Assembly (NCBI RefSeq): GCF_902713615.1
Contig: NC_052171.1
Span: forward strand, 9,984,245-10,048,244
From: Scyliorhinus canicula
Lineage: Eukaryota
Length of the DNA stretch: 64,000 nucleotides
Direction: 5' to 3'
Shown here: piece by piece, positions 25,601 to 57,397 of the stretch
Layout: each line of letters opens with the position of its first letter
How positions within the stretch are numbered: position 1 is the stretch's first letter
Made by a program: the position numbers and the translations under genes
The notes under the pieces: generated by a model
What the model was told of the DNA's origin: nothing
Seen by the model: only the letters and a program-made list of their open reading frames with translations
Databases searched by the model: none

Positions 25601-28600
25601 AACACTGTACACAGGGTCCGGGAGCTAACACTGTACACAGGGTCCGGGGCTGGGAGCTAACACTGTACACAGGGTCCGGGAGCTAACACTGTACACAGGG
25701 TCCGGGAGCTAACACTGTACACAGGGTCCGGGAGCTAACACTGTACACAGGGTCCGGGAGCTAACACTGTACACAGGGTCCGGGAGCTAACACTGTACAC
25801 AGGGTCCGGGAGCTAACACTGTACACAGGGTCCGGGGTTGGGAGCTAACACTGTACACAGGGTCCGGGGCTGGGAGCTAACACTGTACACAGGGTCCGGG
25901 GCTGGGAGCTAACACTGTACACAGGGTCCGGGGCTGGGAGCTAACACTGTACACAGGGTCCGGGGCTGGGAGCTAACACTGTACACAGGGTCCGGGGCTG
26001 GGAGCTAACACTGTACACAGGGTCCGGGAGCTAACACTGTACACAGGGTCCGGGAGGTAACGCTGTACACAGGGTCCGGGAGCTAACACTGTACACAGGG
26101 TCCGGGAGCTAACACTGTACACAGGGTCCGGGGGCTAACACTGTACACAGGGTCCGGGAGCTAACACTGTACACAGGGTCCCGGGGCTAACACTGTACAC
26201 AGGGTCCGGGGCTGGGAGCTAACACTGTACACAGGGTCCGGGAGCTAACACTGTACACAGGGTCCGGGAGCTAACACTGTACACAGGGTCCGGGAGCTAA
26301 CACTGTACACAGGGTCCGGGAGCTAACACTGTACACAGGGTCCGGGGGCTAACACTGTACACAGGGTCCGGGAGCTAACACTGTACACAGGGTCCGGGGC
26401 TGGGAGCTAACACTGTACACAGGGTCCGGGAGCTAACACTGTACACAGGGTCCGGGAGCTAACACTGTACACAGGGTCCGGGAGCTAACACTGTACACAG
26501 GGTCCGGGAGCTAACACTGTACACAGGGTCCGGGAGGTAACACTGTACACAGGGTCCGGGGCTGGGAGCTAACACTGTACACAGGGTCCGGGGGCTAACA
26601 CTGTACACAGGGTCCGGGAGCTAACGCTGTACACAGGGTCCGGGGGCTAACACTGTACACAGGGTCCGGGGCTGGGAGCTAACACTGTACACAGGGTCCG
26701 GGGCTGGGAGCTAACACTGTACACAGGGTCCGGGAGGTAACGCTGTACACAGGGTCCGGGGCTGGGAGCTAACACTGTACACAGGGTCCGGGGCTGGGAG
26801 CTAACACTGTACACAGGGTCCGGGAGCTAACACTGTACACAGGGTCCGGGAGCTAACACTGTACACAGGGTCCGGGGCTGGGAGCTAACACTGTACACAG
26901 GGTCCGGGAGCTAACACTGTACACAGGGTCCGGGGGCTGGGAGCTAACACTGTACACAGGGTCCGGGAGCTAACACTGTACACAGGGTCCGGGAGCTAAC
27001 ACTGTACACAGGGTCCGGGGCTGGGAGCTAACACTGTACACAGGGTCCGGGAGCTAACACTGTACACAGGGTCCGGGGCTGGGAGCTAACACTGTACACA
27101 GGATCCGGGAGCTAACACTGTACACAGGGTCCGGGGCTGGGAGCTAACACTGTACACAGGGGCTGGGAGCTAACACTGTACACAGGGTACGGGGGCTAAC
27201 ACTGTGCACAGGGTCCGGGAGCTAACACTGTACACAGGGTCCGGGGCTGGGAGCTAACACTGTACACAGGGTCCGGGAGCTAACACTGTACACAGGGTAC
27301 GGGGGCTAACACTGTACACAGGGTCCGGGAGCTAACACTGTACACAGGGTCCGGGAGCTAACACTGTACACAGGGTCCGGGAGCTAACACTGTACACAGG
27401 GTCCGGGGGCTAACACTGTGCACAGGGTCCGGGAGCTAACACTGTACACAGGGTCCGGGGCTGGGAGCTAACACTGTACACAGGGTCCGGGAGCTAACAC
27501 TGTACACAGGGTCCGGGGGCTAACACTGTACACAGGGTCCGGGAGCTAACACTGTACACAGGGTCCGGGAGCTAACACTGTACACAGGGTCCGGGGGCTA
27601 ACACTGTACACAGGGTCCGGGGCTGGGAGCTAACACTGTACACAGGGTCCGGGGGCTAACACTGTACACAGGGTCCGGGAGCTAACACTGTACACAGGGT
27701 CCGGGGGCTAACACTGTACACAGGGTCCGGGAGCTAACACTGTACACAGGGTCCGGGAGCTAACACTGTACACAGGGGCTGGGAGCTAACGCTGTACACA
27801 GGGTCCGGGGGCTAACACTGTACACAGGGTCCGAGAGGTAACACTGTACACAGGGTCCGGGGGCTAACACTGTACACAGGGTCCGGGAGCTAACGCTGTA
27901 CACAGGGTCCGGGGGCTAACACTGTACACAGGGTCCGGGAGCTAACACTGTACACAGGGTCCGGGGCTGGGAGCTAACACTGTACACAGGGTCCGGGAGC
28001 TAACACTGTACACAGGGTCCGGGGCTGGGAGCTAACACTGTACACAGGGTCCGGGGCTGGGAGCTAACACTGTACACAGGGTCCGGGAGCTAACACTGTA
28101 CACAGGGTCTGGGAGCTAACACTGTACACAGGGTCCGGGAGCTAACACTGTACACAGGGTCCGGGAGCTAACACTGTACACAGGGTCCGGGAGCTAACGC
28201 TGTACACAGGGTCCGGGAGCTAACACTGTACACAGGGTCCGGGAGCTAACACTGTACACAGGGTCCGGGAGCTAACACTGTACACAGGGTCCGGGACCTA
28301 ACACTGTACACAGGGGCTGGGAGCTAACACTGTACACAGGGTCCGGGGGCTAACACTGTACACAGGGTCCGGGGGCTGGGAGCTAACACTGTACACAGGG
28401 TCCGGGAGCTAACACTGTACACAGGGTCCGGGAGCTAACACTGTACACAGGGTCCGGGGCTGGGAGCTAACACTGTACACAGGGTCCGGGAGCTAACACT
28501 GTACACAGGGTCCGGGGCTGGGAGCTAACACTGTACACAGGATCCGGGAGCTAACACTGTACACAGGGTCCGGGGCTGGGAGCTAACACTGTACACAGGG

Positions 28601-30140
28601 TCCGGGAGCTAACACTGTACACAGGGTCCGGGAGCTAACACTGTACACAGGGTCCGGGGGCTAACACTGTACACAGGGTCCGGGGGCTAACACTGTACAC
28701 AGGGTCCGGGGCTGGGAGCTAACACTGTACACAGGGGCTGGGAGCTAACACTGTACACAGGGGCTGGGAGCTAACACTGTACACAGGGTCCGGGGGCTAA
28801 CACTGTGCACAGGGTCCGGGAGCTAACACTGTACACAGGGTCCGGGGGCTAACACTGTACACAGGGTCCGGGGGCTAACACTGTACACAGGGTCCGGGGC
28901 TGGGAGCTAACACTGTACACAGGGGCTGGGAGCTAACACTGTACACAGGGGCTGGGAGCTAACACTGTACACAGGGTCCGGGGGCTAACACTGTGCACAG
29001 GGTCCGGGGGCTAACACTGTACACAGGGGCTGGGAGCTAACACTGTACACAGGGTACGGGGGCTAACACTGTACACAGGGTCCGGGAGCTAACACTGTAC
29101 ACAGGGTCCGGGAGCTAACACTGTACACAGGGTCCGGGAGCTAACACTGTACACAGGGTCCGGGGGCTAACACTGTGCACAGGGTCCGGGAGCTAACACT
29201 GTACACAGGGTCCGGGAGCTAACACTGTACACAGGGTCCGGGGCTGGGAGCTAACACTGTACACAGGGTCCGGGAGCTAACACTGTACACAGGGTCCGGG
29301 GCTGGGAGCTAACACTGTACACAGGGTCCGGGAGCTAACACTGTACACAGGGTCCGGGAGCTAACACTGTACACAGGGTCCGGGAGCTAACACTGTACAC
29401 AGGGTCCGGGAGCTAACACTGTACACAGGGTCTGGGAGGTAACACTGTACACAGGGTCCGGGGGCTAACACTGTACACAGGGTCTGGGAGCTAACACTGT
29501 ACACAGGGTCCGGGAGCTAACACTGTACACAGGGTCCGGGAGCTAACACTGTACACAGGGTCCGGGAGCTAACACTGTACACAGGGTCCGGGAGCTAACA
29601 CTGTACACAGGGTCCGGGAGGTAACGCTGTACACAGGGTCCGGGAGCTAACACTGTACACAGGGTCCGGGAGCTAACACTGTACACAGGGTCCGGGGGCT
29701 AACACTGTACACAGGGTCCGGGAGCTAACACTGTACACAGGGTCCGGGAGCTAACACTGTACACAGCGTCTGGGAGCTAACACTGTACACAGGGTCCGGA
29801 GCTAACACTGTACACAGGGTCCGGGGCTGGGAGCTAACACTGTACACAGGGTCCGGGAGGTAACGCTGTACACAGGGTCCGGGAGCTAACACTGTACACA
29901 GGGTCCGGGAGCTAACACTGTACACAGGGTCCGGGAGGTAACGCTGTACACAGGGTCCGGGAGCTAACACTGTACACAGGGTCCGGGAGCTAACACTGTA
30001 CACAGGGTCCGGGAGCCAACACTGTACACAGGGTCCGGGAGCTAACACTGTACACAGGGTCCGGGAGCTAACACTGTACACAGGGTCCGGGGCTGGGAGC
30101 TAACACTGTACACAGGGTCCGGGAGCTAACACTGTACACA
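22650..30140. repeat. ~7.5 kb 26-bp minisatellite (gggagctaacactgtacacagggtcc, with 32-bp variants) filling KCTD9 intron 6
   Basis: Tandem units visible directly. Confidence 0.98.
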
Positions 30141-30156
30141 GCATCTCCGAATTTAC

Positions 30157-36238: not shown

Positions 36239-37433
36239 CTGCTCAGGAACAAAAAGAAGAGTAAATTATTAAGACAATATTTAGTGCCTCTGAAATAGCC
36301 GAGTTTTGGATTAAACTCAACAGAGATGACATCTGAACTTCCACCTCCGAGAGCACGACCAGCTTGAGGGGTCAGCGAGCAGAGTTTCATTTCGATAGCC
36401 ACTTTCACATCCTCGGGAGGCAGAGGAGACTGTTGTTTGGAAGTCAATCACAGCAAGACTCCCGTATGGCAATGGGCTCGACAATACACAGCCTTGGATA
36501 GGCCAGGCTATTGTCACAGGGGCACTTAGGGATGGGCAACTCATTTGCCAGCGCACCCCCCCCCCCCCCCCCCCCCCCAACAAGTGGGACTCAGCCCAGC
36601 GAGCCTGCTGGTGGGACACTGCACACCAGGCCGCTTTCATCCACCCAATTCACTTCAGCATCTCTTTCTATCCCCCTCCTCTCTCCTGCACTCGCCTACT
36701 TTCTTCCAAAGCATCAGTCGCAACTCAAACATCTCCTGTCCTGCCGAGTTTCACATTTCCTTGGGAGACAAGAAATTTCCTAATTCGATTCATTAATGGT
36801 CATATTATCCTGTTGGGGTGAGATTGAGTGTGTCCCACACTGAAAGGTCCAGATTTGATCTCCGAGTGAGTGCTGGCTTTACATAAGAACGAGGAGCAAG
36901 CGTGGGCCATTAGCTCCTCGCGTCTGCTCCGCTGTTCTGTGCTGATTTCATCCCCGCTTTCCTGTCCGCTCCTCATAACCCTTCATCCCACGACTAATTA
37001 AAAACCTTTCTGACGCCTCCTTAGGTTGTTTGTTTCGTGTTCCAGGGTCCACTGCTCTTTAGTTCGAGGATTCCACAGATTCAGCATCCTGGATCTGCTC
37101 ATTTCGGTTTTAAATCTCTGCCCCCTTTTGCCTCAAACTCTGGCCTCTAGTTTTAGAATGTCCAACGAGGGGAAATCTGCGTCTACCCTGTCAATCCCCC
37201 TGAGCATCTTGTCGGTCTCAATTTGATCTCCCCCCCATTCTTCTGAACTCAAGAGCGTATAGGCCTGAACTGCTCAATCTCTGACTTATCCCTCAAAACA
37301 CCAATCGGTTAATGAATTTTGGAAAATGTGCTCGATCACCCCCTCCAGCATTGCGTTCGGCCACAGATCTGAAGCGGTGGCAACTGGTGGTGTAGAAATC
37401 CGTCGATGGAATTGGCTGGTTAGAAACACTCAC

Positions 37434-37555
37434 CGAATGAGCGCGATGTCGTCGATGAGGCCGCCCTTTCCATTGTAGAGGTTAACGGCCTTGATGTTCA
37501 ACTTATTGCTCGCGACTGACAGCAGATCCGACAGTGCGCCGTACACAGCAACGAC
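37434..37555 (-). CDS. KCTD9: KCTD9 exon 2 (VVAVYGALSDLLSVASNKLNIKAVNLYNGKGGLIDDIALIR)
   Basis: cag/gtgagt boundaries, 122 nt, in frame. Confidence 0.95.
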
Positions 37556-37959
37556 CTGCCCAGAGAGTGTGTGGGGAGGAAGTGGGGGGAGAAAACAGTG
37601 AGAAGGTGACCAGGAGCACTGCATGCAGGCTGCAACACAGCAATTGATAGGATGCACAGCAAGATCCCGTGCTGGGAGACCATCGGGTCTTCCAATTTCG
37701 GCTGGAAGTGCGATCTCCCGCATCCCTGCCCCCTCCCGGATAAAAACAACCGGGTTTCAAAAAGGGAACTGGCTCCCGCAGGTTCCCACAACCCCAAACG
37801 CGGAAATCAGAGGAAACACTGGGAATATGTCCCTTCTGAAAATAATTAACAAATCCACCTTTCAAATTGCAACGCGATTAAAAGCTTCATTCAGACCCAC
37901 ATGAACTCACGCCAGAAAATTAACTTGCCAACATGAAAGGTCACATCGGCTGCAAGGAT

Positions 37960-39158
37960 CAGTCCTTTAATCCCTGACCACAGACTCAGTCCTTTACCCC
38001 TGGCCCCGAGGCTCGATCCTTTACCCCCTGACCCCCAGGTTTGTCCTTTACCCCCTGACCCCCAGACTCGGTCCTTTACCCCCTGATCCCCAGGCTCGGT
38101 CCTTTAACCCCTGACCCCCAGGTTTGTCCTTTACCCCCTAACCCCTACGCTCAATCCTTTACCCCCTGACCCCCAGTCTCAGTCCTTTACCTCCTGACCC
38201 CCAGGCTCAGTCCTTTACCCCCTGATCCCCAGGCTCAGTCCTTTACCCCCTGACCCCCAGGCTCGATCCTTTACCCCAGACCCCCAGGCTCGGTCCTTTA
38301 CCCCTGACCCCCAGGCTCAGTTCTTTACCCCCTGACCCGCAGGTTTGTCCTTTACCCCCTGACCCCCAGGCTCAGTCCTTTACCCCATGACCCCCAGGTT
38401 TGTCCTTTACCCCCTGACCCCCAGGCTCAGTTCTTTACCCCCTGACCCCCAGGTTTGTCCTTTACCCCCTGACCCCCAGGTTCTGTCCTTTACCCCCTGA
38501 CCCCCAGGCTCAGTCCTTTACCCCATGACCCTCAGGTTTGTCCTTTACCCCCTGACCCCCAGGCTCAGTCCTTTACCCCCTGACCCCAGGCTCAGCCCTT
38601 TACCCCCTGACTCGATCCTTTACCCCCTGACCCCCAGGCTCAGTCCTTTACCCCCTGACCCCCAGGCTCAATCCTTTACCCCCTGACCCCCAGGCTCAAT
38701 CCTTTACCCCCTGACCCCCAAGCTCAGTCCTTTACCCCCTGACTCCCAGGCTCGATCCTTTACCCCCTGACCCCAGGCTCAGTCCTTTAACCCCTGACCC
38801 CCAGGCTGTCCTTGACCCCCAGGCTGTCCTTGACCCCCAGGCTGTCCTTGACCCCCAGGCTCAGTCCTTTACCCCCTGGCCCCCAGGCTCAGTCCTTTAC
38901 CCTCTGATCCCCAGGCTCGATCCTTTACCCTCTGATCCCCAGGCTATGTCCTTTACCCCCTGACCCCCAGGTTTGTCCTTTACCCCCTGACCCCCAGGCT
39001 CTGTCCTTTACCCCCTGACCCCCCCAGGCTCAGTAGTTTACCCCTTGACCCCCAGACTCTGTCCTTGACCCCCAGGCTCAGTCGTTTCCCCCCTGACCTC
39101 CAGGCACAGTCCTTTACCCCCTGACCCCAAGCTTGATCCTTTACCCCCTGACCCCCGG
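37960..39158. repeat. ~28-bp C-rich minisatellite (cctttaccccctgacccccaggctcagt) in KCTD9 intron 1
   Basis: Tandem units visible directly. Confidence 0.95.
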
Positions 39159-39164
39159 CCTCAC

Positions 39165-39212
39165 CTTCCCGTCCCGGTGGCTCCCGTTCACGAACAGCGT
39201 CACCCGCCGCAT
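39165..39212 (-). CDS. KCTD9: KCTD9 exon 1 (MRRVTLFVNGSHRDGK)
   Basis: Matches the KCTD9 N-terminus (KHA domain start); donor gtgagg. The 12 exons sum to 1170 nt = 389 aa plus stop. Confidence 0.95.
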
Positions 39213-39760
39213 CCCCGATACCCACTGGGACTAGGACCGGAAACCGCCGGTGGAGCCCGCCCCTGATCGACAGCTGCGTCATCCAATGGTAGGGCGGCCC
39301 CGCCTTGAGTGTCAGCAGGGCCAACCAATCAGCAGGCGCGATACGGCGAGCAGGCGTGATAGGGCAGGGCCGCGGGTACGGAAGTCCCACCCCCTCTGAC
39401 TCAGCGCAATGGACCAATCAGCGAACCGAATTACCCACAGTGACAGGGCGGGTAACCAATCAGCAGGAACGTAACGGGATGACGATAAGGGCGGGGGAGA
39501 TTTACGCACCAGATTGACAATGCGGAGGACCAATCAAAGTGCAGGATCTCGGGGCGTCATCTGAAAACTGACCAATAGGAGGAGGAGACGAAGGATGAGT
39601 CACCGCCCCCGCGAATGACCGATCAGAGCTCTGGATAGAGTGGAATGGACCAATCAGTGAGGAGAAAATAAGGTGACGTCAGGTTGTATTGACAGCTGGA
39701 ATCACCAATCACAATAGAGTGAAGCAGTGAGTGACAGCGCGTATAGCCAATCGGAGTGCG
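39213..39760 (-). promoter_or_regulatory. KCTD9: KCTD9 CpG-rich promoter with 9 CCAAT boxes, GC boxes and a perfect CRE
   Basis: CCAAT at 39283, 39325, 39414, 39456, 39530, 39572, 39650, 39705 and 39747; TGACGTCA at 39674-39681; several GGGCGG. Confidence 0.8.
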
Positions 39761-39773
39761 CGAAAGAGGAATT

Positions 39774-41590
39774 ACCGCCCCCTGCTGGAGAGAGAAATCA
39801 CCGCCCTCCCGCTGGACGGAGGACTCACTGCCCCCTGGTGGAGGGAGGAATCACTGCCCCCTGCTGGAAGGAGGAATCACAGCCCCCTGCTGGAGGGAGG
39901 AATCACTGCCCCCTGCTGGAGGGAGGAATCACCGCCCCCTGCTGGAGGGAGGAATCACCGCTCCCTGCCGGAGGGAGGAATCACCGCCCCCTGCTGGAGG
40001 GAGGAATCACTGCCCCCTGCTGGAGGGAGGAACCACCGCCCCCTGATGGAGGGAGGAATCACCGCCCCCTGATGGAGGGAGGAATCACCGCCCCCTGCTG
40101 GAGGGAGGAATCACTGCCCCCTGCTGGAGGGAGGAATCACCGCCCCCTGCTGGAGGGAGGAACCACCGACCCCTGCTGGAGGGAGGAACCACCGCCCCCT
40201 GCCGGAGGGAGGAATCACCGCCCCCTGATGGAGGGAGGACTCACAGCCCCCTGCTGGAGGGAGGAATCACTGCCACCTGCTGGAGGGAGGAATCACTGCC
40301 CCCTGCTGGAGGGAGGAACCACCGCCCCCTGCCGGAGGGAGGAATCACCGCCCCCTGCTGGAGGGAGGACTCACAGCCCCCTGCTGGAGGGAGGAATCAC
40401 TGCCACCTGCTGGAGGGAGGAATCACCGCCCCCTGCTGGAGGGTGGAATCACTGCCCCCTGCTGGAGGGAGGAACCACCGCCCCCTGCCTGAGGGGTGGA
40501 ACCACTGCCCCCTGAGGCCCCCTGCTGGAGGGAGGAGTCAACGCCCCTGCTGGAGGGAGCAATCACTGCCCCCTGCTGGAGGGAGGAATCACCACTCCCT
40601 GTTGGAGGGGAGGAATCACCGCCCCCTGTTGGAGGGGAGGAATCACCGCCCCCTGCTGGAGGGGAGGAATCACCGCCCCCTGTTGGAGGGGAGGAATCAC
40701 TGCCCCCTGCTGGAGGGAGGTAACACCACCCCCTGCTGGAGGGGAGGTTTGACTGTACCCGATGGATAGGAGTAATCAGTGCTCCCTGCTGGAGGGGTGG
40801 TATCAGTGTCCCCTGCTGGAGGGAGGAATCACCGCCCCCTGCTGGAGGGGAGGAATCACCGCCCCCTGCTGGAGGGGAGGTAACACCACCCCCTGCTGGA
40901 GGGAGGTAACACCACCCCCTGCTGGAGGGGAGGTTTGACTGTACCCGATGGATAGGAGTAATCAGTGTCCCCTGCTGGAGGGGTGGTATCAGTGCCCCCT
41001 GCTGGAGGGGAGGTTTAACTGTACCCGATGGATAGGAGGAATCACTGCCCCCTGCTGGAGAGGAGGAATCACTGCCCCCTGCTGGAGGGAGGAATCACTG
41101 CCCCCTGCTGGAGGGGAGGAATCACCGCCCCCTGCTGGAGGGGAGGAATCACTGCCCCCTGCTGGAGGGAGGAATCACTGCCCCCTGCTGGAGAGGAGGT
41201 GTTACTGCCCCCTGCTGGAGGGAGGAATCACAGCCCCCTGCTGGAGGGAGGAATCACCGCCCCCTGCTGGAGGGAGGAATCACCGCCCCCTGCTGGAGGG
41301 AGGAATCACCGCCCCCTGCTGGAGGGGAGGTTTGACCGTCCCCGATGGATAGGAGGAATCAGTGCTCCCTGCTGGAAGGGTGGTATCAGTGCCCCCTGCT
41401 GGAGGGGAGGTTTGACCGTCCCCGATGGATAGGAGGAATCAGTGCTCCCTGCTGGGAGGGTGGTATCAGTGCCCCCTGCTGGAGAGGAGGTGTTACTGCC
41501 CCCTGCTGGAGAGGAGGTGTTACTGCCCCCTGCTGGAGGGAGGAATCACCGCCCCCCTGCTGGAGGGAGGAATCACCGCCCCCTGCTGGA
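39774..41590. repeat. 26/27-bp minisatellite (ccccctgctggagggaggaatcaccg) whose unit contains a CTCF consensus motif
   Basis: Reverse complement of the unit core is CCAGCAGGGGGCGG or CCAGCAGGGGGCAG. Confidence 0.95.
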
Positions 41591-42390
41591 TGCCCTCGTA
41601 CGAACGGGATATGGCGCTCGACCCATCGGTCGATGTTCCAACGCACCACAGCAAAAAAACCGGATCAACCTCCTCAGAAGGCAAACACGGGACACAACCG
41701 ACAGAGTAACGTTTGTCGTCCAGTACTTCCCCGAAGCGGAGAAACTGCGACATCTTCTTTGCAGCCTTCAACACATCATCGATGAAGATGAACATCTTGC
41801 CAAGGTCACCCCCACTAATTGCCTTCAAACAACCACAACACCACGCAACCCTGCCAGGGCAATCTCTGCAAGACATGCCAGATCATCGACATGAATACCA
41901 CCATTACACATGGAAACACCACCAACCAGGTACGCGGTACATACCCGTGTGACTCGCCCAACGTTGTCTATCTCATACGCTGCAGGAAAGGATGTCCCGA
42001 AGCGTGGTACATTGGCAAGATCATGCAGACGCGGCGACAACGGATGAACGGGCATCGCGCGACAATCACCAGGCAGGAATGATCCCTTCCGGTCGGGGAA
42101 CACTTCAGCAGTCAAGGGCATTCAGCCTCTGATCTCCGGGTAAGCGTTCTCCAAGGCGGCCTTCAGGACACGCGACAACGCAGAATCGCTGAGCAGAAAC
42201 TGATAGCTAAGTTCCGCACCAATCCCCCACCATCTGGCCTGGGCTTGCCAAATCCTACCAACTGTCCTGGCTTGAGACAATTCACACCTCTTTAACCTGG
42301 GGTTACCCCATCTCTGGATCTGTAAAGACTTAATTACCTGCAAATTCTCACATTCTAAGCATCGTCCGGCATCTCTGACTCTGTCTATAT

Positions 42391-43216
42391 CAGTGGTTCT
42401 CAACCGGGGTCCTTCCCTGGGGGTCCATGCAACATTACTGGGGGTCCGCACAAAAAAATACCGAATTGGGGGTCCACGGTGATATTTTAGTGGTCCATAG
42501 AGCAATTCTACTTCAGAACAATTGTTATTACTGAGAATCAAGTAGAAGAAAAAAATGTTTGTTTTCATGATGAATATTCACCTTTCTCTCTCTCTCTCTC
42601 TCTCTCGCACTGACAAAGGTCAAAGAGAGATTATAATCTATCTAATTTACCTTGAGGGCTGAAGGGGCTCAGAACCAAAAAGGTGCATTTGCTGTGTTTA
42701 TTTTTGTGGTACTGCATTCTGAGGAAAAAAAATCCATACCGGTTGATGACAAATGGGTTTATTGTGCTTTAATGACAGTTGTTGTTGAAGATTGCCCGGG
42801 CTATTGTCCCCTAGGAACAGCCTGGAGGACCTTTAATGACAGAAGCAGCTTATTAAATACCCACGGTTGACCTGACGCTTATGCCACGTTTCTCCTTGAC
42901 AAGTTTAATGAATGATTTAACACAGTAATCACTAGAAACTGTGTATATTTGATATGAATTGGTTATTTTTAGAGTAATTTAATTCAATTTAGTCAGTAAA
43001 AAGTTTTTTTCATTACTTTTTATATTAGAATAAGTTTGGCAACGTACGAAAATACCGCTAATCCGTTTCCAACCCTCACGGTAAGGTAGATGGACTTTAG
43101 GATTAGTTTACCACGCATATAAGAAGCTTTTTTTTCTGTGGAATGGCTATGGGGGTCCACAAAAAAAAATTAAGAGGAAAAGGGGTCCATGGGTTAAAAA
43201 AGGTTGAGAACCCCTG
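42391..43216. mobile_element. Non-autonomous hAT (Charlie-type) DNA transposon
   Basis: TIRs CAGTGGTTCTCAACC / GGTTGAGAACCCCTG; 8-bp TSD gtctatat. Confidence 0.9.
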
Positions 43217-43251
43217 GTCTATATAGATGTTTCTGGAACATACCTCTCCAT

Positions 43252-43288
43252 TCACCTGAGGAAGGAGCTGTGCTCCGAAAGCTAGTGA
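43252..43288 (+). ncRNA. Minimal type I hammerhead ribozyme motif in a Penelope terminal repeat
   Basis: TCAC-CTGAGGA-A-GGAGC/tgt/GCTCC-GAAA-GCTA-GTGA: stem I, core, stem II and palindromic AGCT stem III. Confidence 0.7.
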
Positions 43289-44139
43289 TTCGAAACAAAC
43301 CTGTTGGACTTTAACCTGGTGTTGTCAGACTTCTTACCCCACTGGAGAGCCGGGGCGGGATTCACCTAAGTTCCGCGCCGAAATCGGGCTCGGCGCAGGG
43401 GGTAGAGAATGACCCAAAATAGGCTCCCACGCCGGCACGCGATTCTCCGGCGAATATCCGCGCTCGACGGGCCGACTGCCCGCCCAGTCCCGCCGCCGTG
43501 GTTCTAATGTGGTTCCACCCGGCGGGAACTCAGAGTCACGGCTGGTGTGAGCGTGGGGAGGGGGTGTGGGGATCGGACAGAGCTATGGGACGCACGCCGG
43601 GGTCCTGCTAGCCCCCTGGAGAACGGGGAGCCCCCTCGGACTTTCGAGGAAAAAGTCCGGAGTGATTCTCGCCCGTCTTCCGGCGGGCGTGGGTGACTTA
43701 GTTCCCCCAAAGTGGAGTGAGGTGATCTTCCAGCTCCTATCCTGGATCGCCAGGGATGAGGCTCAACCACATCCGTCTTCAGAACACAGCATTCCCGGGT
43801 TTATACACTAGGTGACCACTAAGGGGAGCTATTTCCTCACTGAGTGAGCCGACTTCAAATACACTTGACTTTTAAAATTCTCAGCTTTGGTCCAATTCTA
43901 TCCCATGGTGTCATCCCTCCCTATCTCCATTGCTCCCCCCCCCCCCCCCCCCCCCCCCCATTCCTCCGATTTCAACCTCTCATCCTTCATTCGGGCACCG
44001 CCAGCCCGCGCCTCTTCGCTCCAAGTCTTCCCGTTGTTTCATCTCTCTCTCTGACTCTCAACGTACGTTGTTTCAAGCCTGTTGTAAGCTCGAAGCAAGG
44101 ATTGTCACAGGAGAGACGGCAGTGTTCGTTCCACCGCGT

Positions 44140-44950
44140 GACGGACTGGGAATATCGTCAGGTGTGCAGAGGAGTGGCGAATGGAATCCAACCCGGAAAA
44201 ACCGGACTTGGGGAAGGCGAAGGAGGCAAAGGATTGCACTATGAATGGTCAGGCATGGGAAGTACAGAGGAGCAGAGGGACCTTGGGGTACATGCTCATC
44301 GATCCCTGAAGGCAGCAGGGCAGGTAGATAAGGTGGTTAAGGAGGCTGATGGGATACTTGCCTTTATTAGCCGAGGTATAGAATATAAGAGCAGGGAGGT
44401 TATGATGGAGCTGTATAAAACGCTGGTTAGGCCACAGCTAGAGTACTGAGTGCAGTTCTCGTCGCCACTCTATAGGAAGGATGTGATTGCCCTGGAGAGG
44501 GAGCAGAGGGGATTCACCAGGATGTTGCCCTGGGCTGGAGCGTTTCAGCTATGGAGAGAGGCTGGTTAGGCTGGGGTTGTTTTCCTTGGAGCAGAGAAGG
44601 CTGAGGGGGGACCTGATTGAGGTGGACAACATTATGAGGGACACAGATCGGGTGGATAGGGTGGAACTTTCCCCCTTAGTAGAGGGTCAATAACCAGGGG
44701 GCACAGATTTAAGGTAAGGGGCGGGAGATTTAGAGGGGATTTGAGGAAAAGGATTTCACCCAGAGGATGATGGGAATCTGGAACTCGCTGCCTGACAGGG
44801 TGGTAGAGGCAGGAACTCTCACAACTATTAAAAAGTGTTTAGATGAGCTCTTGAAACGCCGCAGCAGACAAGGCCTCGGGCCTAGTGCTGGGAAATGGGA
44901 TCAGTGTCGTCAGATATTCCTGGGAACGATGGGCTAATTAGCCTCCTTGG
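44140..44950 (+). mobile_element. CR1-like LINE fragment
   Basis: EQRDLGVH...ELYKTLVRPQLEY, degenerate. Confidence 0.85.
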
Positions 44951-45212
44951 GCGCTCTGAACGCTCCCGGGTCTCCGAAGAGGCAATCTCCCCTGCTCTGA
45001 CCATGGTGCGTGTTGGAAAGCTTTCACACGCCCCCTCCCGGAGACATGTACTCATTGCCTGACGGACAAGGTGGGCTCATTCTGCCAAAAGCGATCACCC
45101 ACTGACTTTGGCTGTTACGGTGCGACAATGCCCAGGGTGCCATGAGAGGCAAGGAGCTGACAATCGCAAACACTTAACAAGGAGACTTAAATATTGCAAA
45201 TTTTCAAATCAT

Positions 45213-45235
45213 TTTATTTGTCACAGAATAAATAA
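45213..45235 (-). terminator. DUSP2: DUSP2 3' UTR AU-rich element (UUAUUUAUU) and polyadenylation signal
   Basis: Minus-strand TTATTTATT at 45227-45235 and AATAAA at 45213-45218. Confidence 0.7.
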
Positions 45236-46136
45236 TGCATCCCATAATTTACTAAACGCGTATTTCAAAAAATATATTTGTGCGTATATGTATATATATC
45301 TTTATTTATAAAGTACTTTTCTTCCGAAGGAAATTAGCAGGTAGTTCTCTTATAACAGAGTCACATTTTCCATTGTGTTTCGAGAGGGGGCTGTGGGGCG
45401 AGAGTCCGGGGTGATTCTAATCGTTTCAGCGACTTCGGCCTGAGGTGGCCTCGCCTGGAAGTTCCCCCCTTCTCGAACGCAGTCAGTGCTATAAGGTAGA
45501 GAAACGCACGCCCCGTGAGTCTCACATGGTGGCAGCGTTTACCGCTTCTCAGGACGGTTCTGGCTCAGAAAACAAAGAAACAAACAAACAAACATCGGCA
45601 GGCGCCTGGCATCCATTCCGCGATGGGAAGAGCAGCATTTGGGCGGGATAATCTCCGGGAGGGTCTCCTTACGAGATGGTTCGCGGTGAGCCGAGCCTTA
45701 AAACCGGCAAGGTGGCATGCTCCAAGACGTGGCGTCAACTCAACTCGCAGATTTCGGTCAAACAGGCCTCCTTGACAGACGGCAAGGAATGAATTGTCCC
45801 GCTCATTCCCAATGGGAACGTCAACACGCTGGGATTGAAGTCAACAGCTCCCGCAACAGTGAAGTGCTAAGATGGCCACATGGCAGACGCAATGTGCTGC
45901 AGTTTTGTCTGTCATGAATGGCGACGGCTGATACAGAGTTGACGTCATGTGTTCTGAACCGGCCTAGTGGCTCGACAGGAGGGTCACAAAAGTGGGCAGT
46001 GAGGCACGCCGTTTTCCCAGTCATTGGGGTTGGGGAGGGGGGAGGGGTGAAAGAGGACTGCTGGGGAGAGCAATGACCTGCGTTTTGTTTCCCCCCTTCC
46101 CCTCAATGCGAAATGCAAAAACCCGGCCAGCTGGCG

Positions 46137-46351
46137 TTAGCGGCAGAGGACCTCGGTCTCGAACTGTAGCAGTTGCCCCATGAAGCCCAGGTTGGGCGAG
46201 ATGACTCCACGGCGCTGCTTGACAAAGTCGAAGGCTTCTTCCAGGCCCACCCGCTGTGTTCGGATGAGATACGCCAGGCAGATGGTGGCGGACCTGGAGA
46301 TGCCAGCCTGGCAGTGAACCAAGACTCGTCCGCCATTGTTCTTCACTGAAT
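46137..46351 (-). CDS. DUSP2: DUSP2 coding exon 4 (catalytic VHCQAGISRS; ends QFETEVLCR*)
   Basis: HCx5R motif. DUSP2-type AFDFVKQRRGVISPN and a short C-terminus without the DUSP1/4 tail. Confidence 0.93.
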
Positions 46352-47418
46352 CTAATAGGGGGCAAATCCAAGGAGGAAAATCTCATTAATACATGTCAAC
46401 CGTGGGCATCATTCACATCCTAAACATTGGCACAACTGGTGTGGTAGTGGCCATGTCACTGGGCTGGTACCCAGGCTAATACTCAGACGACAGGCGCCAG
46501 ATCTCACTAGGGCGGGGGCTGGTTTAGCTCAGTGGGCTAAACAGCTGGCTTGCAATGCAGAACAAGGCCAGCAGCGCGGGTTCAATTCCTGTACCAGCCT
46601 CCCCGAACAGGGAGAATGTGGCGACTCGGGACTTCTCACAGTAACTTCATTTGAAGCCTACTGGTGACAATAAGCGATTATTATTTAAATTCAATTCATA
46701 AAATATAACGGAGATCGAGAAACTCTCACTGATTATCGTAAAAACCCATCTGGCTCATTAATCGGTAAGGATTTTTTTTTCTTTTTAAATTTCGAGTGCC
46801 CAATTATACTTTTTCCAATTCAGGGGCAATTTATCGTGGCCAATCCCGCACAACGTTTTGGGTTGTGTGGGGGGGTGAGACCCACGCAGACAACGGGGAG
46901 AATGGGCAATCTCCACACGGACAGTGACCCGGGGCCGGGATCGAACCCGGGGCCTCGGCAGCACGAGGCAGCAGTGCTAACCACTGCGCCACCCTTCTCA
47001 GGAAGGAAACTGTTATTGTCACCAGTCGGCTTCAAATGAAGTTACTGTGAAAAGCCCCTAGTCGCCACATCCCGGTGCCTGTTCGGGGAGGCCGCTACGG
47101 GAATGTATAGAACTATGAGGGACGTCGATGGGTAGAAATGTTTCTCTTTTGGGGAAGGGGGGCACAGATTTAAGGGAAGGGGCAGGAGGCTGAGAGGGGA
47201 TTTGAAAAGAAGCTCTTTCACCCAGAGGATGATGGGAACTCACAGCCCGAAAGGGTGGTCAAGGCGGGAACTCTCACAACTATTGAGAAGCATTTAGACG
47301 AGCACTTGTCTGCTCGATCGTGGAAAGGTGCTTGATGGGTGGCCGGTGATTCATCGCCCCCCCCACCCTCAGAGCTGAACGGGAGGTTGAAGGGAGAGAG
47401 AAAAAAACGCTCGCTCAC

Positions 47419-47638
47419 CAATGAAATCAATAGCTTCGCAAAACCAGGCGCTGATGTCAGACATGTGGCTGTCCTCAACAGGGATACATTTGTACTGGAA
47501 GACCCCCTCGAAATAGTTGGGGCAGTTGGAGGACACGTTGAGGAGGGCAGTGATTCCCAGCGACTGCAGTGTCTCTTTCCGGGAGGAATGGGCGGCGCTG
47601 CCAAGGTAGAGGAAGGGCAGAATCTCCACGGGACCACC
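47419..47638 (-). CDS. DUSP2: DUSP2 coding exon 3 (GGPVEILPFLYLGS...DISAWFCEAIDFI)
   Basis: cag/gtgagc boundaries, 220 nt, DSP catalytic domain. Confidence 0.93.
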
Positions 47639-47790
47639 CTGGAAAGAAACCAAACACATTGCTCCCGCGTTAGGACAGATCGAAACGACACGAGTTTAAT
47701 GAAAGCTGTACTGATTATCGTGGCCAACTGTGCTCCCTGCCCCCCCCCCCCCCCCCCCCCCCAGCTCTGACTCCCCTCTGGACTCCTCAC

Positions 47791-47909
47791 CTGATCGTAC
47801 AGCGGTGTGCCCCTGGCGACCAACGTGGGCATGGTGCCCGCCTGTGGGCAACAGCTGAGGTCCTCTGTGCACATCTCAGGGAAGAGGGAATGGAAGGTCT
47901 CGTAGCCAC
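47791..47909 (-). CDS. DUSP2: DUSP2 coding exon 2 (GGYETFHSLFPEMC...TPLYDQ)
   Basis: cag/gtgagg boundaries, 119 nt, in frame. Confidence 0.92.
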
Positions 47910-48188
47910 CTGCGAGAGAGAGAGAGAGAGAGAAGGTTAATAACCAGAATTGCACAAGGCATACGATCAATAGCAAGTCAGGCACAGGGGGAGGGCTGAG
48001 AGATGGCATTCATTGCAAAGGTTGACCCACCGTAATCAGATCTTGGTGGGTAGACTATAGATTAAGCTGATTTGCCCGTGAGCAAGCACTTTCACCTGCT
48101 GAGCAAGTCGTTTTTTAAAAAAATCAGAGCGTGCCTCTCGTATAATCGTTTGGATCTGTTTTCGAGGGGGGCCGGAATTGAGTCTTAC

Positions 48189-48555
48189 CTTTCAAGAAGC
48201 AGAGCTGCACTCTGCTGGTGTCCAGCTCAGCATTGAGGGTGTTGAGGACCAGCCTGGCTGTGTTGTCCCGACCGAGCGCAGCCAAGCTGGGGCTCCTGTC
48301 GTCGAACACCACCACCGTCCGGTAACGGCTGCAGCTGAGGGAGGCGCGGAGACTCTCCTCGGGCAGGATGCAGTCCAGGGCGATGGCTCCTTTCGAGCGC
48401 CGCTTCACGATGGTGTTACAGTACACGTTGCGCGACCCCCGGATGTGGGAGACGTTGAAACTCAAGAACGGGCGACAGTCCAGCAGGAGGATTTCTTCGA
48501 CCAGCAGCTTCACCAAGTGGCAACAGTCCACCTCCAGCGATTCGGTGGTCACCAT
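48189..48555 (-). CDS. DUSP2: Dual-specificity MAPK phosphatase DUSP2 (PAC-1), coding exon 1 (rhodanese domain, KIM IVKRRSKG)
   Basis: LLLDCRPFLSF...NTIVKRRSKG...LCFLK; donor gtaaga. The four exons sum to 921 nt = 306 aa plus stop. Confidence 0.9.
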
Positions 48556-51078: not shown

Positions 51079-51911
51079 GTGACGTTTTACGTCAAAAAAT
51101 ATCGGTGGCGGCCCAGCACTGATCGTCCGGTGAGGGGCTACCAGGCGGAGAACAAAAGCGGCCGGAAGATGGCCGGGTCTGTGGCCGCGCGCGGACCCGA
51201 CCTGCCAGATAGTGTCCAACTGGACACCCCCCTCGCCACTCCTGGGCCACCCCCACCCACCGCCATCCCTCACCGAAGCGGTACGGCTCTCACCCGACTG
51301 TGGCGCCGCTAGACGCAGTCCGCAGCCACCATGCCGGGTTCCCGACCGTTGATGCCGAACGTTCCCCCGCGTGGTTGGGAACTCGGGCCATCGGAGGCAG
51401 AGCCTCGGGGGAGGGCCTCAGCTGACGCCCTGAGGTCTCCCAACGGCGTGCGGCGCGCTCCTCGATGATGCCATTTTGGAGCGGACGGAGCATCTGAAAA
51501 CAGGCGCCACCCCCGATTCCATCGTTAAAAAGGATTCTCCGCCCGATCACCAATTACAAAATCGCCGTCGGTGAACCAAGCGTTCCTCCCGTAGAGTTTT
51601 ACAGGAGAAATACACCTGGTACGACCCGTGCAGCCACCAGTTTGATCAACAGTAAAGGTTTGCCCATTCCCGAAGAAATGAACATGAGAACCTGAGAGGA
51701 GGAGGCCATTTGGCCCCTCAAGCCTGCCCCACAAGACCATACGATCATGGCTGATCTTGTGGGCCCCTGACTCTACTTTCCATCCCTGTCCCCTTTGACC
51801 TTCTTGTCAATCAGAAATCTGTCTGAATATATTCAGCGACCCACAGCCCCCACCACTCTCTGGGGAGAGCGAATTGCACAGACTGACCATCTTCAGAGAG
51901 AAGAAATTCCC

Positions 51912-52398
51912 CCTCTCTGTTGGCCATCTTAGTTCCTCCTCTCTGTCGGCCATCTTAGTTCCTCTTCTCTGTCGGCCATCTTAGTTCCTCCTCTCTGTCG
52001 GCCATTTTAGTTCCTCCTCTCTGTCGGCCATCTTAGTTCCTCCTCTCTGTCGGCCATCTTAGTTCCTCCTCTGTGTCGGCCATCTTAGTTCCTCCTCTCT
52101 GTTGGCCATCAGTTCCTCCTCTCTGTCGGCCATCTTAGTTCCTCCTCTCTGTCGGCCATCTTAGTTCCTCCTCTGTGTCGGCCATCTTAGTTCCTCCTCT
52201 CTGTCGGCCATCTTAGTTCCTCCTCTTTGGCGGCCATCTTAGTCCTCCTCTTTGGCGGCCATCTTAGTTCCTCCTCGCTGTCGGCCATCTTAGTTCCTCC
52301 TCTGTGTCGGCCATCTTAGTTCCTCCTCTCTGTCGGCCATCTTAGTTCCTCCTCTTTGGCGGCCATCTTAGTTCCTCCTCTCTGCCGGCCATCTTAGT
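51912..52398. repeat. 26-bp minisatellite (ggccatcttagttcctcctctctgtc), 19 units, containing a YY1-type motif
   Basis: Reverse complement of the unit core is AAGATGGCCG. Confidence 0.95.
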
Positions 52399-52739
52399 TG
52401 ATCCTGGTGACGGTGTCTAGAACAGGATGTGAGATTGAGGATAAGAACTCGGAGAACCATGGGAAATCTCTAGGACTGCAGATCACTACTTGTACAGGAA
52501 TTTGGGAAGAGGTTGGGAAGCTGATTAGAATGACGAATGTCTGAAATTAATGGGGGGGGGGCGGAGGGGAGTGATTAATGGTGAGCAGTTGGGGTTGATT
52601 GAGACATTAATTTGTTCCAACCCCCGCGTCAAATGATGAGGCGTGGATAGGCCGGTGAGGTCACGTTGAGTCACCTCATTCGACCTCGAGTAAGTGGTGA
52701 AACGTTGTCCTCTGACTGAGTGCTCACGTGTAGTTTTGT

Positions 52740-57200: not shown

Positions 57201-57397
57201 AACCAGTACCCCACTGCCCCCCCCACCAACCAGTACCCCACTGCCCCCCCGCCAACCAGTACCCCACTGCCCAACCCCCGCACCCCGCCAACCAGTACCC
57301 CACTGCCCAAACCCCCCCACACCCCGCCAACCAGTACCCCACTGCCCAACCCCCCCCCCCCCCCCCCCCCCGCCCCCCGCACCCCGCCAACCAGTAC
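54290..57397. repeat. ~3.1 kb C-rich minisatellite (ccccactgcccaacccccgcaccccgccagccagta, variable length)
   Basis: Tandem units; explains the very long ORFs on both strands. Confidence 0.95.

What the first reader, a model, noticed from the sequence alone, without database searches (positions are those of the whole stretch)
39774..41590. Minisatellite of about 60 co-oriented CTCF consensus motifs between the KCTD9 promoter and DUSP2
Seen: most 26/27-bp units contain C(C/T)GCCCCCTGCTGG, i.e. CCAGCAGGGGGCGG or CCAGCAGGGGGCAG on the minus strand. The array starts about 20 bp beyond the last CCAAT box of the KCTD9 promoter. Established: this fits the CTCF core consensus CCASYAGRKGGCRS, and motif orientation sets the direction of cohesin blocking. 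Inference: a promoter-proximal CTCF site has been amplified into a repeat-encoded insulator. It would face KCTD9/GNRH1 and separate them from the inducible DUSP2 domain, and copy number could tune insulation. Units with ACCG contain a CpG and units with ACTG do not, so methylation sensitivity may differ between units.
Basis: partly seen in the sequence, partly recalled or inferred. Interest (0 to 1): 0.8.

Follow-up and report, generated by a model that had tools for sequence, protein, structure and literature searches.

The report
Ancient CTCF-site minisatellite upstream of KCTD9
A 1.8-kb tandem repeat beside a shark's KCTD9 promoter carries about 60 same-direction binding motifs for the genome-folding protein CTCF, and two distantly related sharks have the same repeat with the same motif at the matching place, so it is probably a maintained piece of genome architecture, not junk.

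Summary
Positions 39766-41590 are a 26/27-bp minisatellite of 70 units. Sixty units carry a strong CTCF core motif, all on the minus strand, which is the KCTD9 strand. The array starts 554 bp upstream of the KCTD9 start codon, just beyond a CpG-island promoter with nine CCAAT boxes, and lies downstream of DUSP2.

Orthologous loci reached through DUSP2 add the main new result. Heptranchias perlo has at least 149 units of 27 bp. Stegostoma tigrinum has a 52-bp array plus decayed copies. Both arrays lie downstream of DUSP2 (in Stegostoma also upstream of KCTD9) and share the 16-nt core CCAGCAGGGGGCRGTG on the gene strand. A ray, Narcine, has two single co-oriented sites at the matching place. Four-fold sites in DUSP2 differ by 44-49%, and the neighbouring intron-1 minisatellites are unrelated between species, so the core looks constrained.

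The most likely reading is an ancient, repeat-encoded, one-directional CTCF barrier or anchor at the KCTD9 promoter. CTCF occupancy and insulation are untested. Copy number ranges from 2 to at least 149, which argues against fine tuning.

The closest precedents are DXZ4 and DXPas34. The scan noted other CTCF-like arrays elsewhere in this genome, but not at this locus.

The parts
39766..41590 (-). CTCF-core minisatellite: 70 units of 26/27 bp. Gene-sense consensus is CCTCCAGCAGGGGGCGGTGATTCCTC. Sixty units hold a CTCF motif on the minus strand.
39766..40494 (-). Sub-array A: regular 26-bp units, 91-93% alike at lag 26. It includes a 130-bp (5-unit) block duplicated at 98.5% identity (40183-40312 and 40313-40442). 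The first three units at the promoter edge are degenerate.
40495..40557 (-). Irregular junction of truncated units between the two sub-arrays.
40558..41590 (-). Sub-array B: mixed 26/27-bp units with an 80-bp higher-order repeat in five copies (92-97.5% alike). One of its three units has lost the motif. The array ends abruptly on a near-perfect unit.
39213..39765 (-). KCTD9 5' region and CpG-island promoter (CpG o/e 0.93 over 39165-39765, which also spans exon 1), with nine gene-sense ATTGG (CCAAT) boxes from -539 to -75.
39165..39212 (-). KCTD9 exon 1 coding part (MRRVTLFVNGSHRDGK, then a GT donor).
   Evidence: aligned to Stegostoma and Narcine exon 1
37955..39163 (-). KCTD9 intron-1 minisatellite (28-bp unit) starting at the splice donor. 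Used here as an internal control because its unit is not conserved between species.
41591..43300 (+). Retroelement fragment abutting the distal end of the array. I read it by eye as a 5'-truncated Penelope-like element with a GIY-YIG-like C-terminus. The extent is approximate.
43813..43831 (+). Lone CTCF-like motif (14.9 bits) pointing toward DUSP2. It is the best hit outside the array and a possible divergent partner, but it may be chance.
46137..48555 (-). DUSP2 coding exons (rhodanese and DSPc domains). The last exon ends ...QFETEVLCR, with the stop at 46137.
45304..45360 (-). 57-bp element downstream of the DUSP2 stop, conserved in two rays (83-86%). It is the only other alignable non-coding piece of the intergenic region.

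Best explanation
This is an old, orthologously conserved minisatellite whose repeat unit is essentially one CTCF binding site plus a short pyrimidine-rich spacer. It sits just distal to the KCTD9 CpG-island promoter, between the 3' end of DUSP2 and KCTD9, and all three genes (DUSP2, KCTD9, GNRH1) lie on the same strand.

Shown: the array, its motif content and single orientation; its position; higher-order blocks that show ongoing unequal exchange; and the presence of the same unit family with an identical 16-nt core, on the same strand, at the matching position in a hexanchiform and an orectolobiform shark. A ray has two single sites there.

Inferred: a promoter-proximal CTCF site was amplified in or before the last common ancestor of living sharks. 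The array has since turned over continuously by slippage and unequal exchange, while selection kept the CTCF core.

Inferred mechanism: CTCF occupies a changing subset of units. Neighbouring units can be filled only in the 19-bp core mode, not the 35-bp mode. With tens of sites, at least one is nearly always bound. The array would therefore act as a very robust, one-directional stop or anchor for cohesin extruding from the KCTD9/GNRH1 side. That would tie the KCTD9 promoter to its own domain and limit cross-talk with the inducible DUSP2 unit.
For: Array and motifs. A chance resemblance is very unlikely: p about 2e-7 per position, and no random or neighbouring unit comes close.

Gene context.

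Orthologous loci: Heptranchias perlo L002 has an array at 19464-23481+, period 27, at least 149 copies, with 134 PWM hits all on the gene strand. Stegostoma tigrinum L004 has a 52-bp x 9.9 array plus decayed copies, giving 15 gene-strand hits from -2391 to -481 of the KCTD9 ATG. Narcine bancroftii L003 has two gene-strand hits at -454 and -386.

The order array/sites, then ATTGG boxes, then ATG is the same in the window, Stegostoma and Narcine.

The window array aligns over its whole length to the Heptranchias array (75%) and to the Stegostoma array (68-71%). The rest of the intergenic DNA does not align, apart from exons and one 57-bp element.

The core is identical at 16/16 positions with Heptranchias and 15/16 with Stegostoma. 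DUSP2 four-fold sites differ by 0.44-0.49, so neutral P(16/16) is about 2-4e-5. Invariant alignment columns fall in the core. The exact 16-mer occurs 27, 120 and 9 times, only inside the arrays and only on the gene strand.

Intron-1 minisatellites at the same locus share no sequence between species, which serves as a control.

Heptranchias is in Squalomorphii and Stegostoma in Galeomorphii, so together they span the crown of living sharks.

Literature: loop-extrusion signatures in a skate (bioRxiv 10.64898/2026.10.19.759930); clustered CTCF sites block extrusion stepwise (PMC10497529); 19-bp and 35-bp footprints (PMC12081859); orientation-dependent contacts of a tandem bank of CTCF motifs (PMC5899087).
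Against: No binding, methylation or contact data for any shark were available here.

Within the window's array, variation does not track the information content of the motif (rho -0.14, p 0.49). Ten units have lost the motif. Many old copies in Stegostoma have lost it as well, so individual copies are not protected.

Half the units have lost the unit's CpG by C-to-T change. This is what germ-line methylation would produce, although that position is degenerate in the motif.

Copy number differs about 70-fold between species.

The Heptranchias locus ends inside the array, so KCTD9 itself was not seen there. Only three sharks and one informative ray were read.

The genome-wide distribution of this unit family is unknown.

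The PWM was recalled from memory. The IUPAC consensus and the exact-word counts do not depend on it.
Confidence: 0.62

Rival explanations
1. It is a neutral hypervariable minisatellite that happened to be seeded on, or to resemble, a CTCF site. It is methylated and unbound, has no effect on chromatin folding, and persists only through repeat dynamics.
For: About a quarter of this window is minisatellite, so arrays are cheap in this genome. Within-array variation is unrelated to motif information. CpG-to-TpG change is present in half the units. Copy number varies wildly between species. Decayed copies occur in Stegostoma.
Against: A neutral array's consensus should drift at the neutral rate. 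Instead the 16-nt core is identical in lineages whose four-fold sites differ by about 47-49%. The intron-1 arrays at the same locus have been completely replaced. A chance match is about 1 in 40,000 units.
Confidence: 0.12
2. The unit belongs to a dispersed repeat family (satellite or transposon-borne minisatellite) that carries a CTCF motif and tends to land near promoters. On this view the three species' arrays are independent insertions or are homogenised from a shared mobile source, so the conservation says nothing about this locus.
For: Earlier notes of this scan list at least nine other tandem CTCF-like arrays in this genome. One of them (s1-268225) was followed up and judged an ordinary, highly abundant satellite family. 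Retroelement fragments abut the array.
Against: The 16-mer occurs nowhere else in the 62 kb of window or in about 90 kb of flanks from four other species. Position, strand and order relative to the CCAAT boxes and the ATG are the same in each species. The promoter-side edge is degenerate, as expected for growth in place. The ray has plain single sites at the same spot. A protein-level search with the array's open frame and a metagenome DNA scan found nothing, but both are weak tests.
Confidence: 0.12
3. The conserved core is read by something other than CTCF (another zinc-finger protein, a recombination-hotspot factor), or it acts through DNA structure or as a polymerase roadblock that stops DUSP2 read-through into the KCTD9 promoter.
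For: DUSP2 lies upstream on the same strand, so read-through would run into the KCTD9 promoter. G5/C5 runs recur every 26 bp. The unit ends in a chi-like GCTGGAGG, a classic look for a minisatellite (resemblance recalled from memory).
Against: The conserved block coincides with the 19-bp CTCF core and scores 19-20 bits in three species. Variable positions in the array sit largely at degenerate motif positions, for example R at position 16. No other candidate factor was identified. A roadblock role would still most simply work through bound CTCF.
Confidence: 0.08

Closest known systems
DXZ4/Dxz4 macrosatellite (mammalian X chromosome)
   Same: It is a tandem array carrying a bank of CTCF motifs in one orientation. 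It is kept at a conserved place next to the same gene (PLS3) across mammals, with sequence conservation restricted to the CTCF motif and large differences in array size and unit organisation (PMC3491370). Its orientation dictates the direction of long-range contacts (PMC5899087). The shark array shows the same pattern: conserved place, conserved core, free spacer, variable unit length and copy number.
   Different: DXZ4 units are kilobases long. The shark units are 26-27 bp, shorter than the full 35-bp CTCF footprint. DXZ4 works in the context of X inactivation, whereas this array abuts an ordinary CpG-island promoter. CTCF binding is shown for DXZ4 and untested here. The shark array spans the crown of living sharks, probably older than DXZ4 (my recollection of divergence times, not checked).
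DXPas34 minisatellite at mouse Tsix
   Same: It is a minisatellite with monomers of 30-34 bp, each containing a CTCF site, lying next to a promoter. The number of sites varies between related species (PMC3149622).
   Different: DXPas34 is restricted to rodents, and some voles lack CTCF sites altogether. Its CTCF motifs are weaker and CpG-rich. The shark core is a near-consensus site kept across distant orders.
Clustered CTCF sites at TAD boundaries
   Same: Several closely spaced, often co-oriented sites add up to a robust block to loop extrusion (PMC10497529). Loop-extrusion signatures exist in cartilaginous fish. In Stegostoma an inverted block of the same units lies distal to the main cluster, giving the divergent arrangement typical of boundaries.
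   Different: Ordinary clusters are a few unrelated sites spread over kilobases. Here tens to more than a hundred copies of one site are packed head to tail. The divergent arrangement is not seen in the window (one weak candidate at 43813) or in Heptranchias.
Classical GC-rich hypervariable minisatellites
   Same: The unit length, GC richness, higher-order blocks and abrupt or degenerate edges are typical of arrays evolving by slippage and unequal exchange.
   Different: Such arrays normally turn over quickly, as the intron-1 arrays at this very locus do. This one has kept its unit across lineages whose silent sites are near saturation.

Membership tests
CTCF binding site (core motif, JASPAR MA0139.1 type) | Sequence match to the core consensus or matrix | tested here: met
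   37 exact IUPAC matches. 60 PWM hits, with the consensus unit at 18.99 bits. The matrix was recalled from memory.
CTCF binding site (core motif, JASPAR MA0139.1 type) | Evolutionary conservation of the core relative to flanks | tested here: met
   16/16 and 15/16 core identity against 44-49% four-fold divergence. Invariant columns fall in the core.
CTCF binding site (core motif, JASPAR MA0139.1 type) | Occupancy by CTCF in cells (ChIP, CUT&Tag, footprint) | not testable with these tools
   No chromatin data were available.
Tandem-repeat CTCF platform (DXZ4, DXPas34 kind) | Head-to-tail array in which each unit carries a CTCF motif, all in one orientation | tested here: met
   60 of 70 units, all on the minus strand. 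The same holds in Heptranchias (134 hits) and Stegostoma.
Tandem-repeat CTCF platform (DXZ4, DXPas34 kind) | Conserved location next to the same genes, with conservation centred on the motif | tested here: met
   The array lies downstream of DUSP2 and upstream of KCTD9 in the window and Stegostoma, and downstream of DUSP2 in Heptranchias. KCTD9 itself was not seen in the Heptranchias locus.
Tandem-repeat CTCF platform (DXZ4, DXPas34 kind) | Orientation-dependent effect on long-range contacts | not testable with these tools
   This needs Hi-C or an inversion experiment.
TAD boundary / insulator | Insulation step or loop anchor in contact maps | not testable with these tools
   No contact data were available.
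TAD boundary / insulator | Divergent clusters of CTCF motifs | tested here: inconclusive
   Present in Stegostoma: minus-strand hits at 12736-14482, then 15 plus-strand hits. In the window there is only one 14.9-bit candidate at 43813. None in Heptranchias.
Hypervariable minisatellite (VNTR) | Tandem units of 10-100 bp with signs of unequal exchange | tested here: met
   (blocks 92-98.5% identical).
Hypervariable minisatellite (VNTR) | Length polymorphism within a population | not testable with these tools
   Only a single assembly was available.
Dispersed satellite or transposon-borne repeat family | Many copies at unrelated loci | tested here: inconclusive
   No copy was found elsewhere in about 150 kb read from five species. 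No whole-genome search was possible. Searches found nothing.

The most novel reading that the evidence does not exclude
Sharks have kept one minisatellite at one locus since before the split of Squalomorphii and Galeomorphii. It would be a repeat-encoded bank of CTCF sites at the KCTD9 promoter that is continually rebuilt by unequal exchange, while selection holds the 16-19-nt protein-binding core. That would make it one of the oldest orthologous minisatellites known. It would also be a natural series (2, 15, 60 and at least 134 sites) for asking how the number and spacing of CTCF sites set barrier strength. It may be the best-documented example of a wider class of promoter-abutting CTCF arrays in this genome, several of which the scan has noted.
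Probability: 0.45. Interest if true: 0.75.

Novelty: new member of a known kind. Interest (0 to 1): 0.62.

Why it matters
Tandem arrays of CTCF sites with a demonstrated architectural role are few and mostly tied to mammalian X inactivation (DXZ4, Firre, DXPas34). A promoter-adjacent array, with no tie to X inactivation, whose binding core has outlasted saturation of silent sites across shark orders would show two things. First, selection can maintain a minisatellite as such. Second, repeat amplification is an old vertebrate way of making a barrier robust.

Related species carry 2, 15, 60 and more than 130 copies of the same site at the same place, and a ray has the unamplified state. The locus is therefore a ready-made comparative test of how CTCF site number, 26-bp versus 52-bp spacing and orientation relate to insulation. 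Hi-C reads were probably made for these chromosome-scale assemblies and could be reused for that test.

Tried and rejected
1. Chance resemblance. Rejected: p is about 2e-7 per position, and no random 26-mer or other array in the window comes near.

2. My own first reading, that neutral seeding of arrays on random CTCF sites explains it. Dropped after the orthologous loci showed core conservation.

3. Selection signal inside the array (variation against motif information). No signal in the window. In Heptranchias variation sits mostly in the spacer, but one variant spread by block duplication dominates, so this is not decisive.

4. Common descent of the window's several 26-bp arrays. No significant shared words, except between the two arrays at 54-57 kb.

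5. Searching public proteins with the array's 262-aa open frame to find other copies. No hit.

6. Exact-pattern scan of metagenome contigs. No hit.

7. Exact look-ups of window exon ORFs and of fragment P0001. Not on record. The bamboo-shark contig with P0002 is only 1.5 kb.

8. No DNA was returned for Heterodontus, Cetorhinus, Mustelus, Scyliorhinus torazame or Hemitrygon. In Pristis, KCTD9 is not within 10 kb.

9. Rfam found only a tRNA in the window. The bacterial promoter/terminator scan is irrelevant here.

10. The array is not coding. All three plus-strand frames are open only because the unit lacks stop triplets.

11. I compared the unit by eye with the human PRDM9 13-mer. No match, and not pursued.

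12. The library holds no paper linking KCTD9 to a CTCF array.
Full report
OBSERVATION

Tandem Repeats Finder reports one array at 39766-41590: period 26, 68.9 copies, 81% matches. Cutting it in register gives 70 units of 25-28 bp. On the plus strand the consensus is GAGGAATCACCGCCCCCTGCTGGAGG. On the minus strand this reads CCTCCAGCAGGGGGCGGTGATTCCTC.

All matches are on the minus strand and inside the array, with none in the rest of the window. I then used a 19-position CTCF matrix (JASPAR MA0139.1). I recalled it from memory, so it is flagged as such. Its consensus and its two CpG positions agree with what PMC6868874 says about that matrix. It gives 60 hits at p<1e-4, 56 at p<1e-5 and 37 at p<1e-6, all on the minus strand. 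The remaining 62 kb has 16 weak hits, about the chance number.

The consensus unit scores 18.99 bits, p about 2e-7 per position. None of 19,425 random 26-mers from the window reached 16 bits when tandemised. The window's other minisatellites score below 1.3 bits.

CONTEXT

- KCTD9 is on the minus strand. Exon 1 runs 39212-39165 (MRRVTLFVNGSHRDGK, then a GT donor). Exon 2 lies at about 37563-37430 and carries the KHA domain. Later exons reach at least 21917.
- The 600 bp around the 5' end, 39165-39765, form a CpG island (o/e 0.93, against 0.54 for the window and 0.20 for the array). The promoter has nine gene-sense ATTGG boxes from -539 to -75.
- The array runs from -554 to -2378 relative to the ATG.
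- Beyond it lies a retroelement fragment that I read by eye as Penelope-like. Pfam gave no family for it.
- Next comes the 3' end of a MAP-kinase phosphatase gene on the same strand (exons 48555-46137; rhodanese and DSPc domains). Its nearest full-length relatives are annotated DUSP2, and it ends, as theirs do, right after QFET.VLC..
- GNRH1 lies downstream of KCTD9 on the same strand, near 1430.

ANATOMY

The array has two parts.

- 39766-40494 is a regular 26-bp array, 91-93% alike at lag 26. It contains a five-unit block duplicated at 98.5% identity.
- 40558-41590 mixes 26- and 27-bp units. It contains an 80-bp higher-order repeat in five copies (92-97.5% alike), in which one of three units has lost the motif.
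- An irregular junction separates the two parts.

The promoter-side edge is degenerate, while the distal edge stops on a near-perfect unit next to the retroelement.

The commonest variant is C-to-T at the unit's only CpG, present in half the units. That position is the degenerate R of the motif, so both forms score about 19 bits.

Across the 26 unit positions, variability does not follow the information content of the motif (rho -0.14, p 0.49). On the window alone I therefore first favoured a neutral array seeded on a CTCF site.

ORTHOLOGOUS LOCI

No tool searches shark genomes directly, so I went through DUSP2.

1. An exhaustive representative search with exon 1 led to a paddlefish DUSP2.
2. 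Two homologue searches then listed cartilaginous-fish DUSP2 proteins.
3. Exact look-ups returned DNA with 10-kb flanks for four species.

DUSP2 followed by KCTD9 on the same strand is seen in Narcine, Stegostoma, Heterodontus, Cetorhinus and Scyliorhinus torazame. The gaps are 3.6-9.6 kb.

- Heptranchias perlo (Squalomorphii). Six kb downstream of DUSP2 an array begins and runs off the end of the locus. It has period 27, at least 149 copies and 94% matches, with unit TCCCACCAGCAGGGGGCGGTGTCCCTC. It holds 134 CTCF hits, all on the gene strand, 120 of them at about 20 bits.
- Stegostoma tigrinum (Galeomorphii). A 52-bp x 9.9 array (97% matches) lies upstream of the KCTD9 ATG. It is a dimer of the 26-bp unit in which one half has lost the motif. 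Older, decayed copies surround it. Together they give 15 gene-strand hits from -2391 to -481. About 0.5 kb further out lies an inverted, decayed block of the same unit family. It is 74% identical to window units over 155 bp, spacer included. This gives the divergent arrangement typical of boundaries.
- Narcine bancroftii, a ray. There is no array. Two single gene-strand motifs (17.2 and 13.5 bits) lie at -454 and -386, followed by two ATTGG boxes and the ATG.
- Pristis pectinata was uninformative, because KCTD9 is not within 10 kb.

IS THE CONSERVATION MEANINGFUL?

I compared the window's 37300-46400 interval with these loci by blastn. Only exons, one 57-bp element downstream of DUSP2, scattered transposon fragments, and the array aligned. 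The array aligned over its whole length to Heptranchias (75%) and over about 500 bp to Stegostoma (68-71%).

The 16-nt core CCAGCAGGGGGCGGTG is identical in the window and Heptranchias. It differs in Stegostoma only at the degenerate R. The spacers differ in sequence and length. The exact word CCAGCAGGGGGCRGTG occurs 27, 120 and 9 times in the three sharks, always on the gene strand and only inside these arrays.

Four-fold degenerate sites of DUSP2 differ by 0.44-0.49 between the window's species and each of the others. A neutral 16-mer would therefore stay identical with probability about 2-4e-5.

The locus also supplies its own control. KCTD9 intron 1 begins with a minisatellite in the window, in Stegostoma and in Narcine, but the three units are unrelated.

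A neutral array's consensus should drift like any other sequence, and this one did not. I conclude that the core is under constraint, and that the unit family dates at least to the common ancestor of living sharks. The ray may show either the unamplified state or a loss. Without a chimaera this cannot be polarised.

MECHANISM (INFERRED)

CTCF is the obvious reader of a 19-20-bit core. Signatures of CTCF-dependent loop extrusion are reported for a skate.

The motif points toward KCTD9 and GNRH1. By the convergent rule (summarised in PMC5899087), the array should stop cohesin coming from that side and anchor loops into that domain.

Reported in-cell footprints are 19 bp (core) or 35 bp (core plus upstream module) (PMC12081859). 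At 26-bp spacing, about 2.5 helical turns, neighbouring units could both be filled only in the core mode.

Single CTCF sites block extrusion incompletely, and clustering adds up stepwise (PMC10497529). Tens of sites would therefore make an almost permanent barrier.

What the barrier is for is not shown. It could shield the housekeeping KCTD9 promoter and GNRH1 from the inducible DUSP2 unit, tether KCTD9 to its own enhancers, or stop DUSP2 read-through.

- Copy-number tuning is not supported. The motif count is 2, 15, 60 and at least 134 in four species.
- Differential methylation sensitivity is weak. The unit's CpG is at motif position C12, where methylation is reported to matter less than at C2. 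Only about four units have a C2 CpG.

COMPARISON WITH WHAT IS KNOWN

The nearest precedent is DXZ4. It is a tandem array kept next to PLS3 across mammals, with conservation restricted to the CTCF motif and otherwise free organisation (PMC3491370). Its motif orientation directs its contacts.

DXPas34 is a 30-34-bp minisatellite with a CTCF site per monomer, but it is confined to rodents and is unstable.

The shark array is a new member of this kind. It is built at minisatellite scale, lies next to an ordinary promoter, occurs in cartilaginous fish and is apparently older. The library holds no paper linking KCTD9 to such an array.

EARLIER SCAN NOTES

Other pieces of this genome carry at least nine noted tandem CTCF-like arrays. 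Two of them are said to abut promoters. One was followed up and judged an ordinary abundant satellite. None is this locus.

These notes supply the main surviving rival, that the unit is a dispersed family. I could test this only weakly: there are no other copies in about 150 kb read from five species.

LIMITS

- No binding, methylation or contact data were available.
- KCTD9 was not seen in the truncated Heptranchias locus.
- Only three sharks and one informative ray were read.
- The PWM was recalled from memory.
- Divergence times are from my recollection only.
- The window's own species is not known to me.

Noticed in passing
window 37955-39163; L004 17447-19254; L003 18680-18924: KCTD9 intron 1 begins with a minisatellite within 0-90 bp of the exon-1 splice donor in the window's shark, in Stegostoma and in Narcine, but the three units are unrelated. 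In the window each 28-bp unit carries a donor-like GGTAAAG. The position recurs without sequence conservation, and this is unexplained.
   Followed up: partly
window 22651-30141, 39766-41590, 51907-52399, 56226-57272: Four separate minisatellites in one window have a period of exactly 26 bp, with unrelated consensus units. About a quarter of the window is minisatellite.
   Followed up: partly
window 39324-39753: Nine co-oriented CCAAT boxes (seven match the stricter RCCAATCR pattern, out of 15 such matches in the window) lie in the KCTD9 CpG-island promoter. Stegostoma has 4-5 and Narcine 2 in the same 600 bp, so box number has expanded with irregular spacing of 31-89 bp.
   Followed up: partly
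window about 1430, minus strand: A GNRH1-type precursor encodes the decapeptide QHWSFDLRPG followed by GKR, with Asp at position 6, where most vertebrate GnRH forms have Gly (from memory).
   Followed up: no
window 45304-45360: A 57-bp element about 0.8 kb downstream of the DUSP2 stop codon is 83-86% identical in two rays (Narcine, Pristis). It is probably a conserved 3'-UTR element.
   Followed up: no
window 41591-43300: A retroelement fragment abuts the distal end of the array. Its ORFs (41442-41894, 41819-42082) look Penelope-like by eye, but Pfam returned no family.
   Followed up: partly
Together with the CCAAT and CTCF arrays, three arrays in this window carry textbook promoter or insulator motifs. 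This was not tested against a motif library.
   Followed up: no
L004 14345-14498: Stegostoma has an inverted, decayed block of about six units of the same 26-bp family just distal to its main CTCF cluster. This gives a divergent motif arrangement not seen in the window or in Heptranchias.
   Followed up: yes
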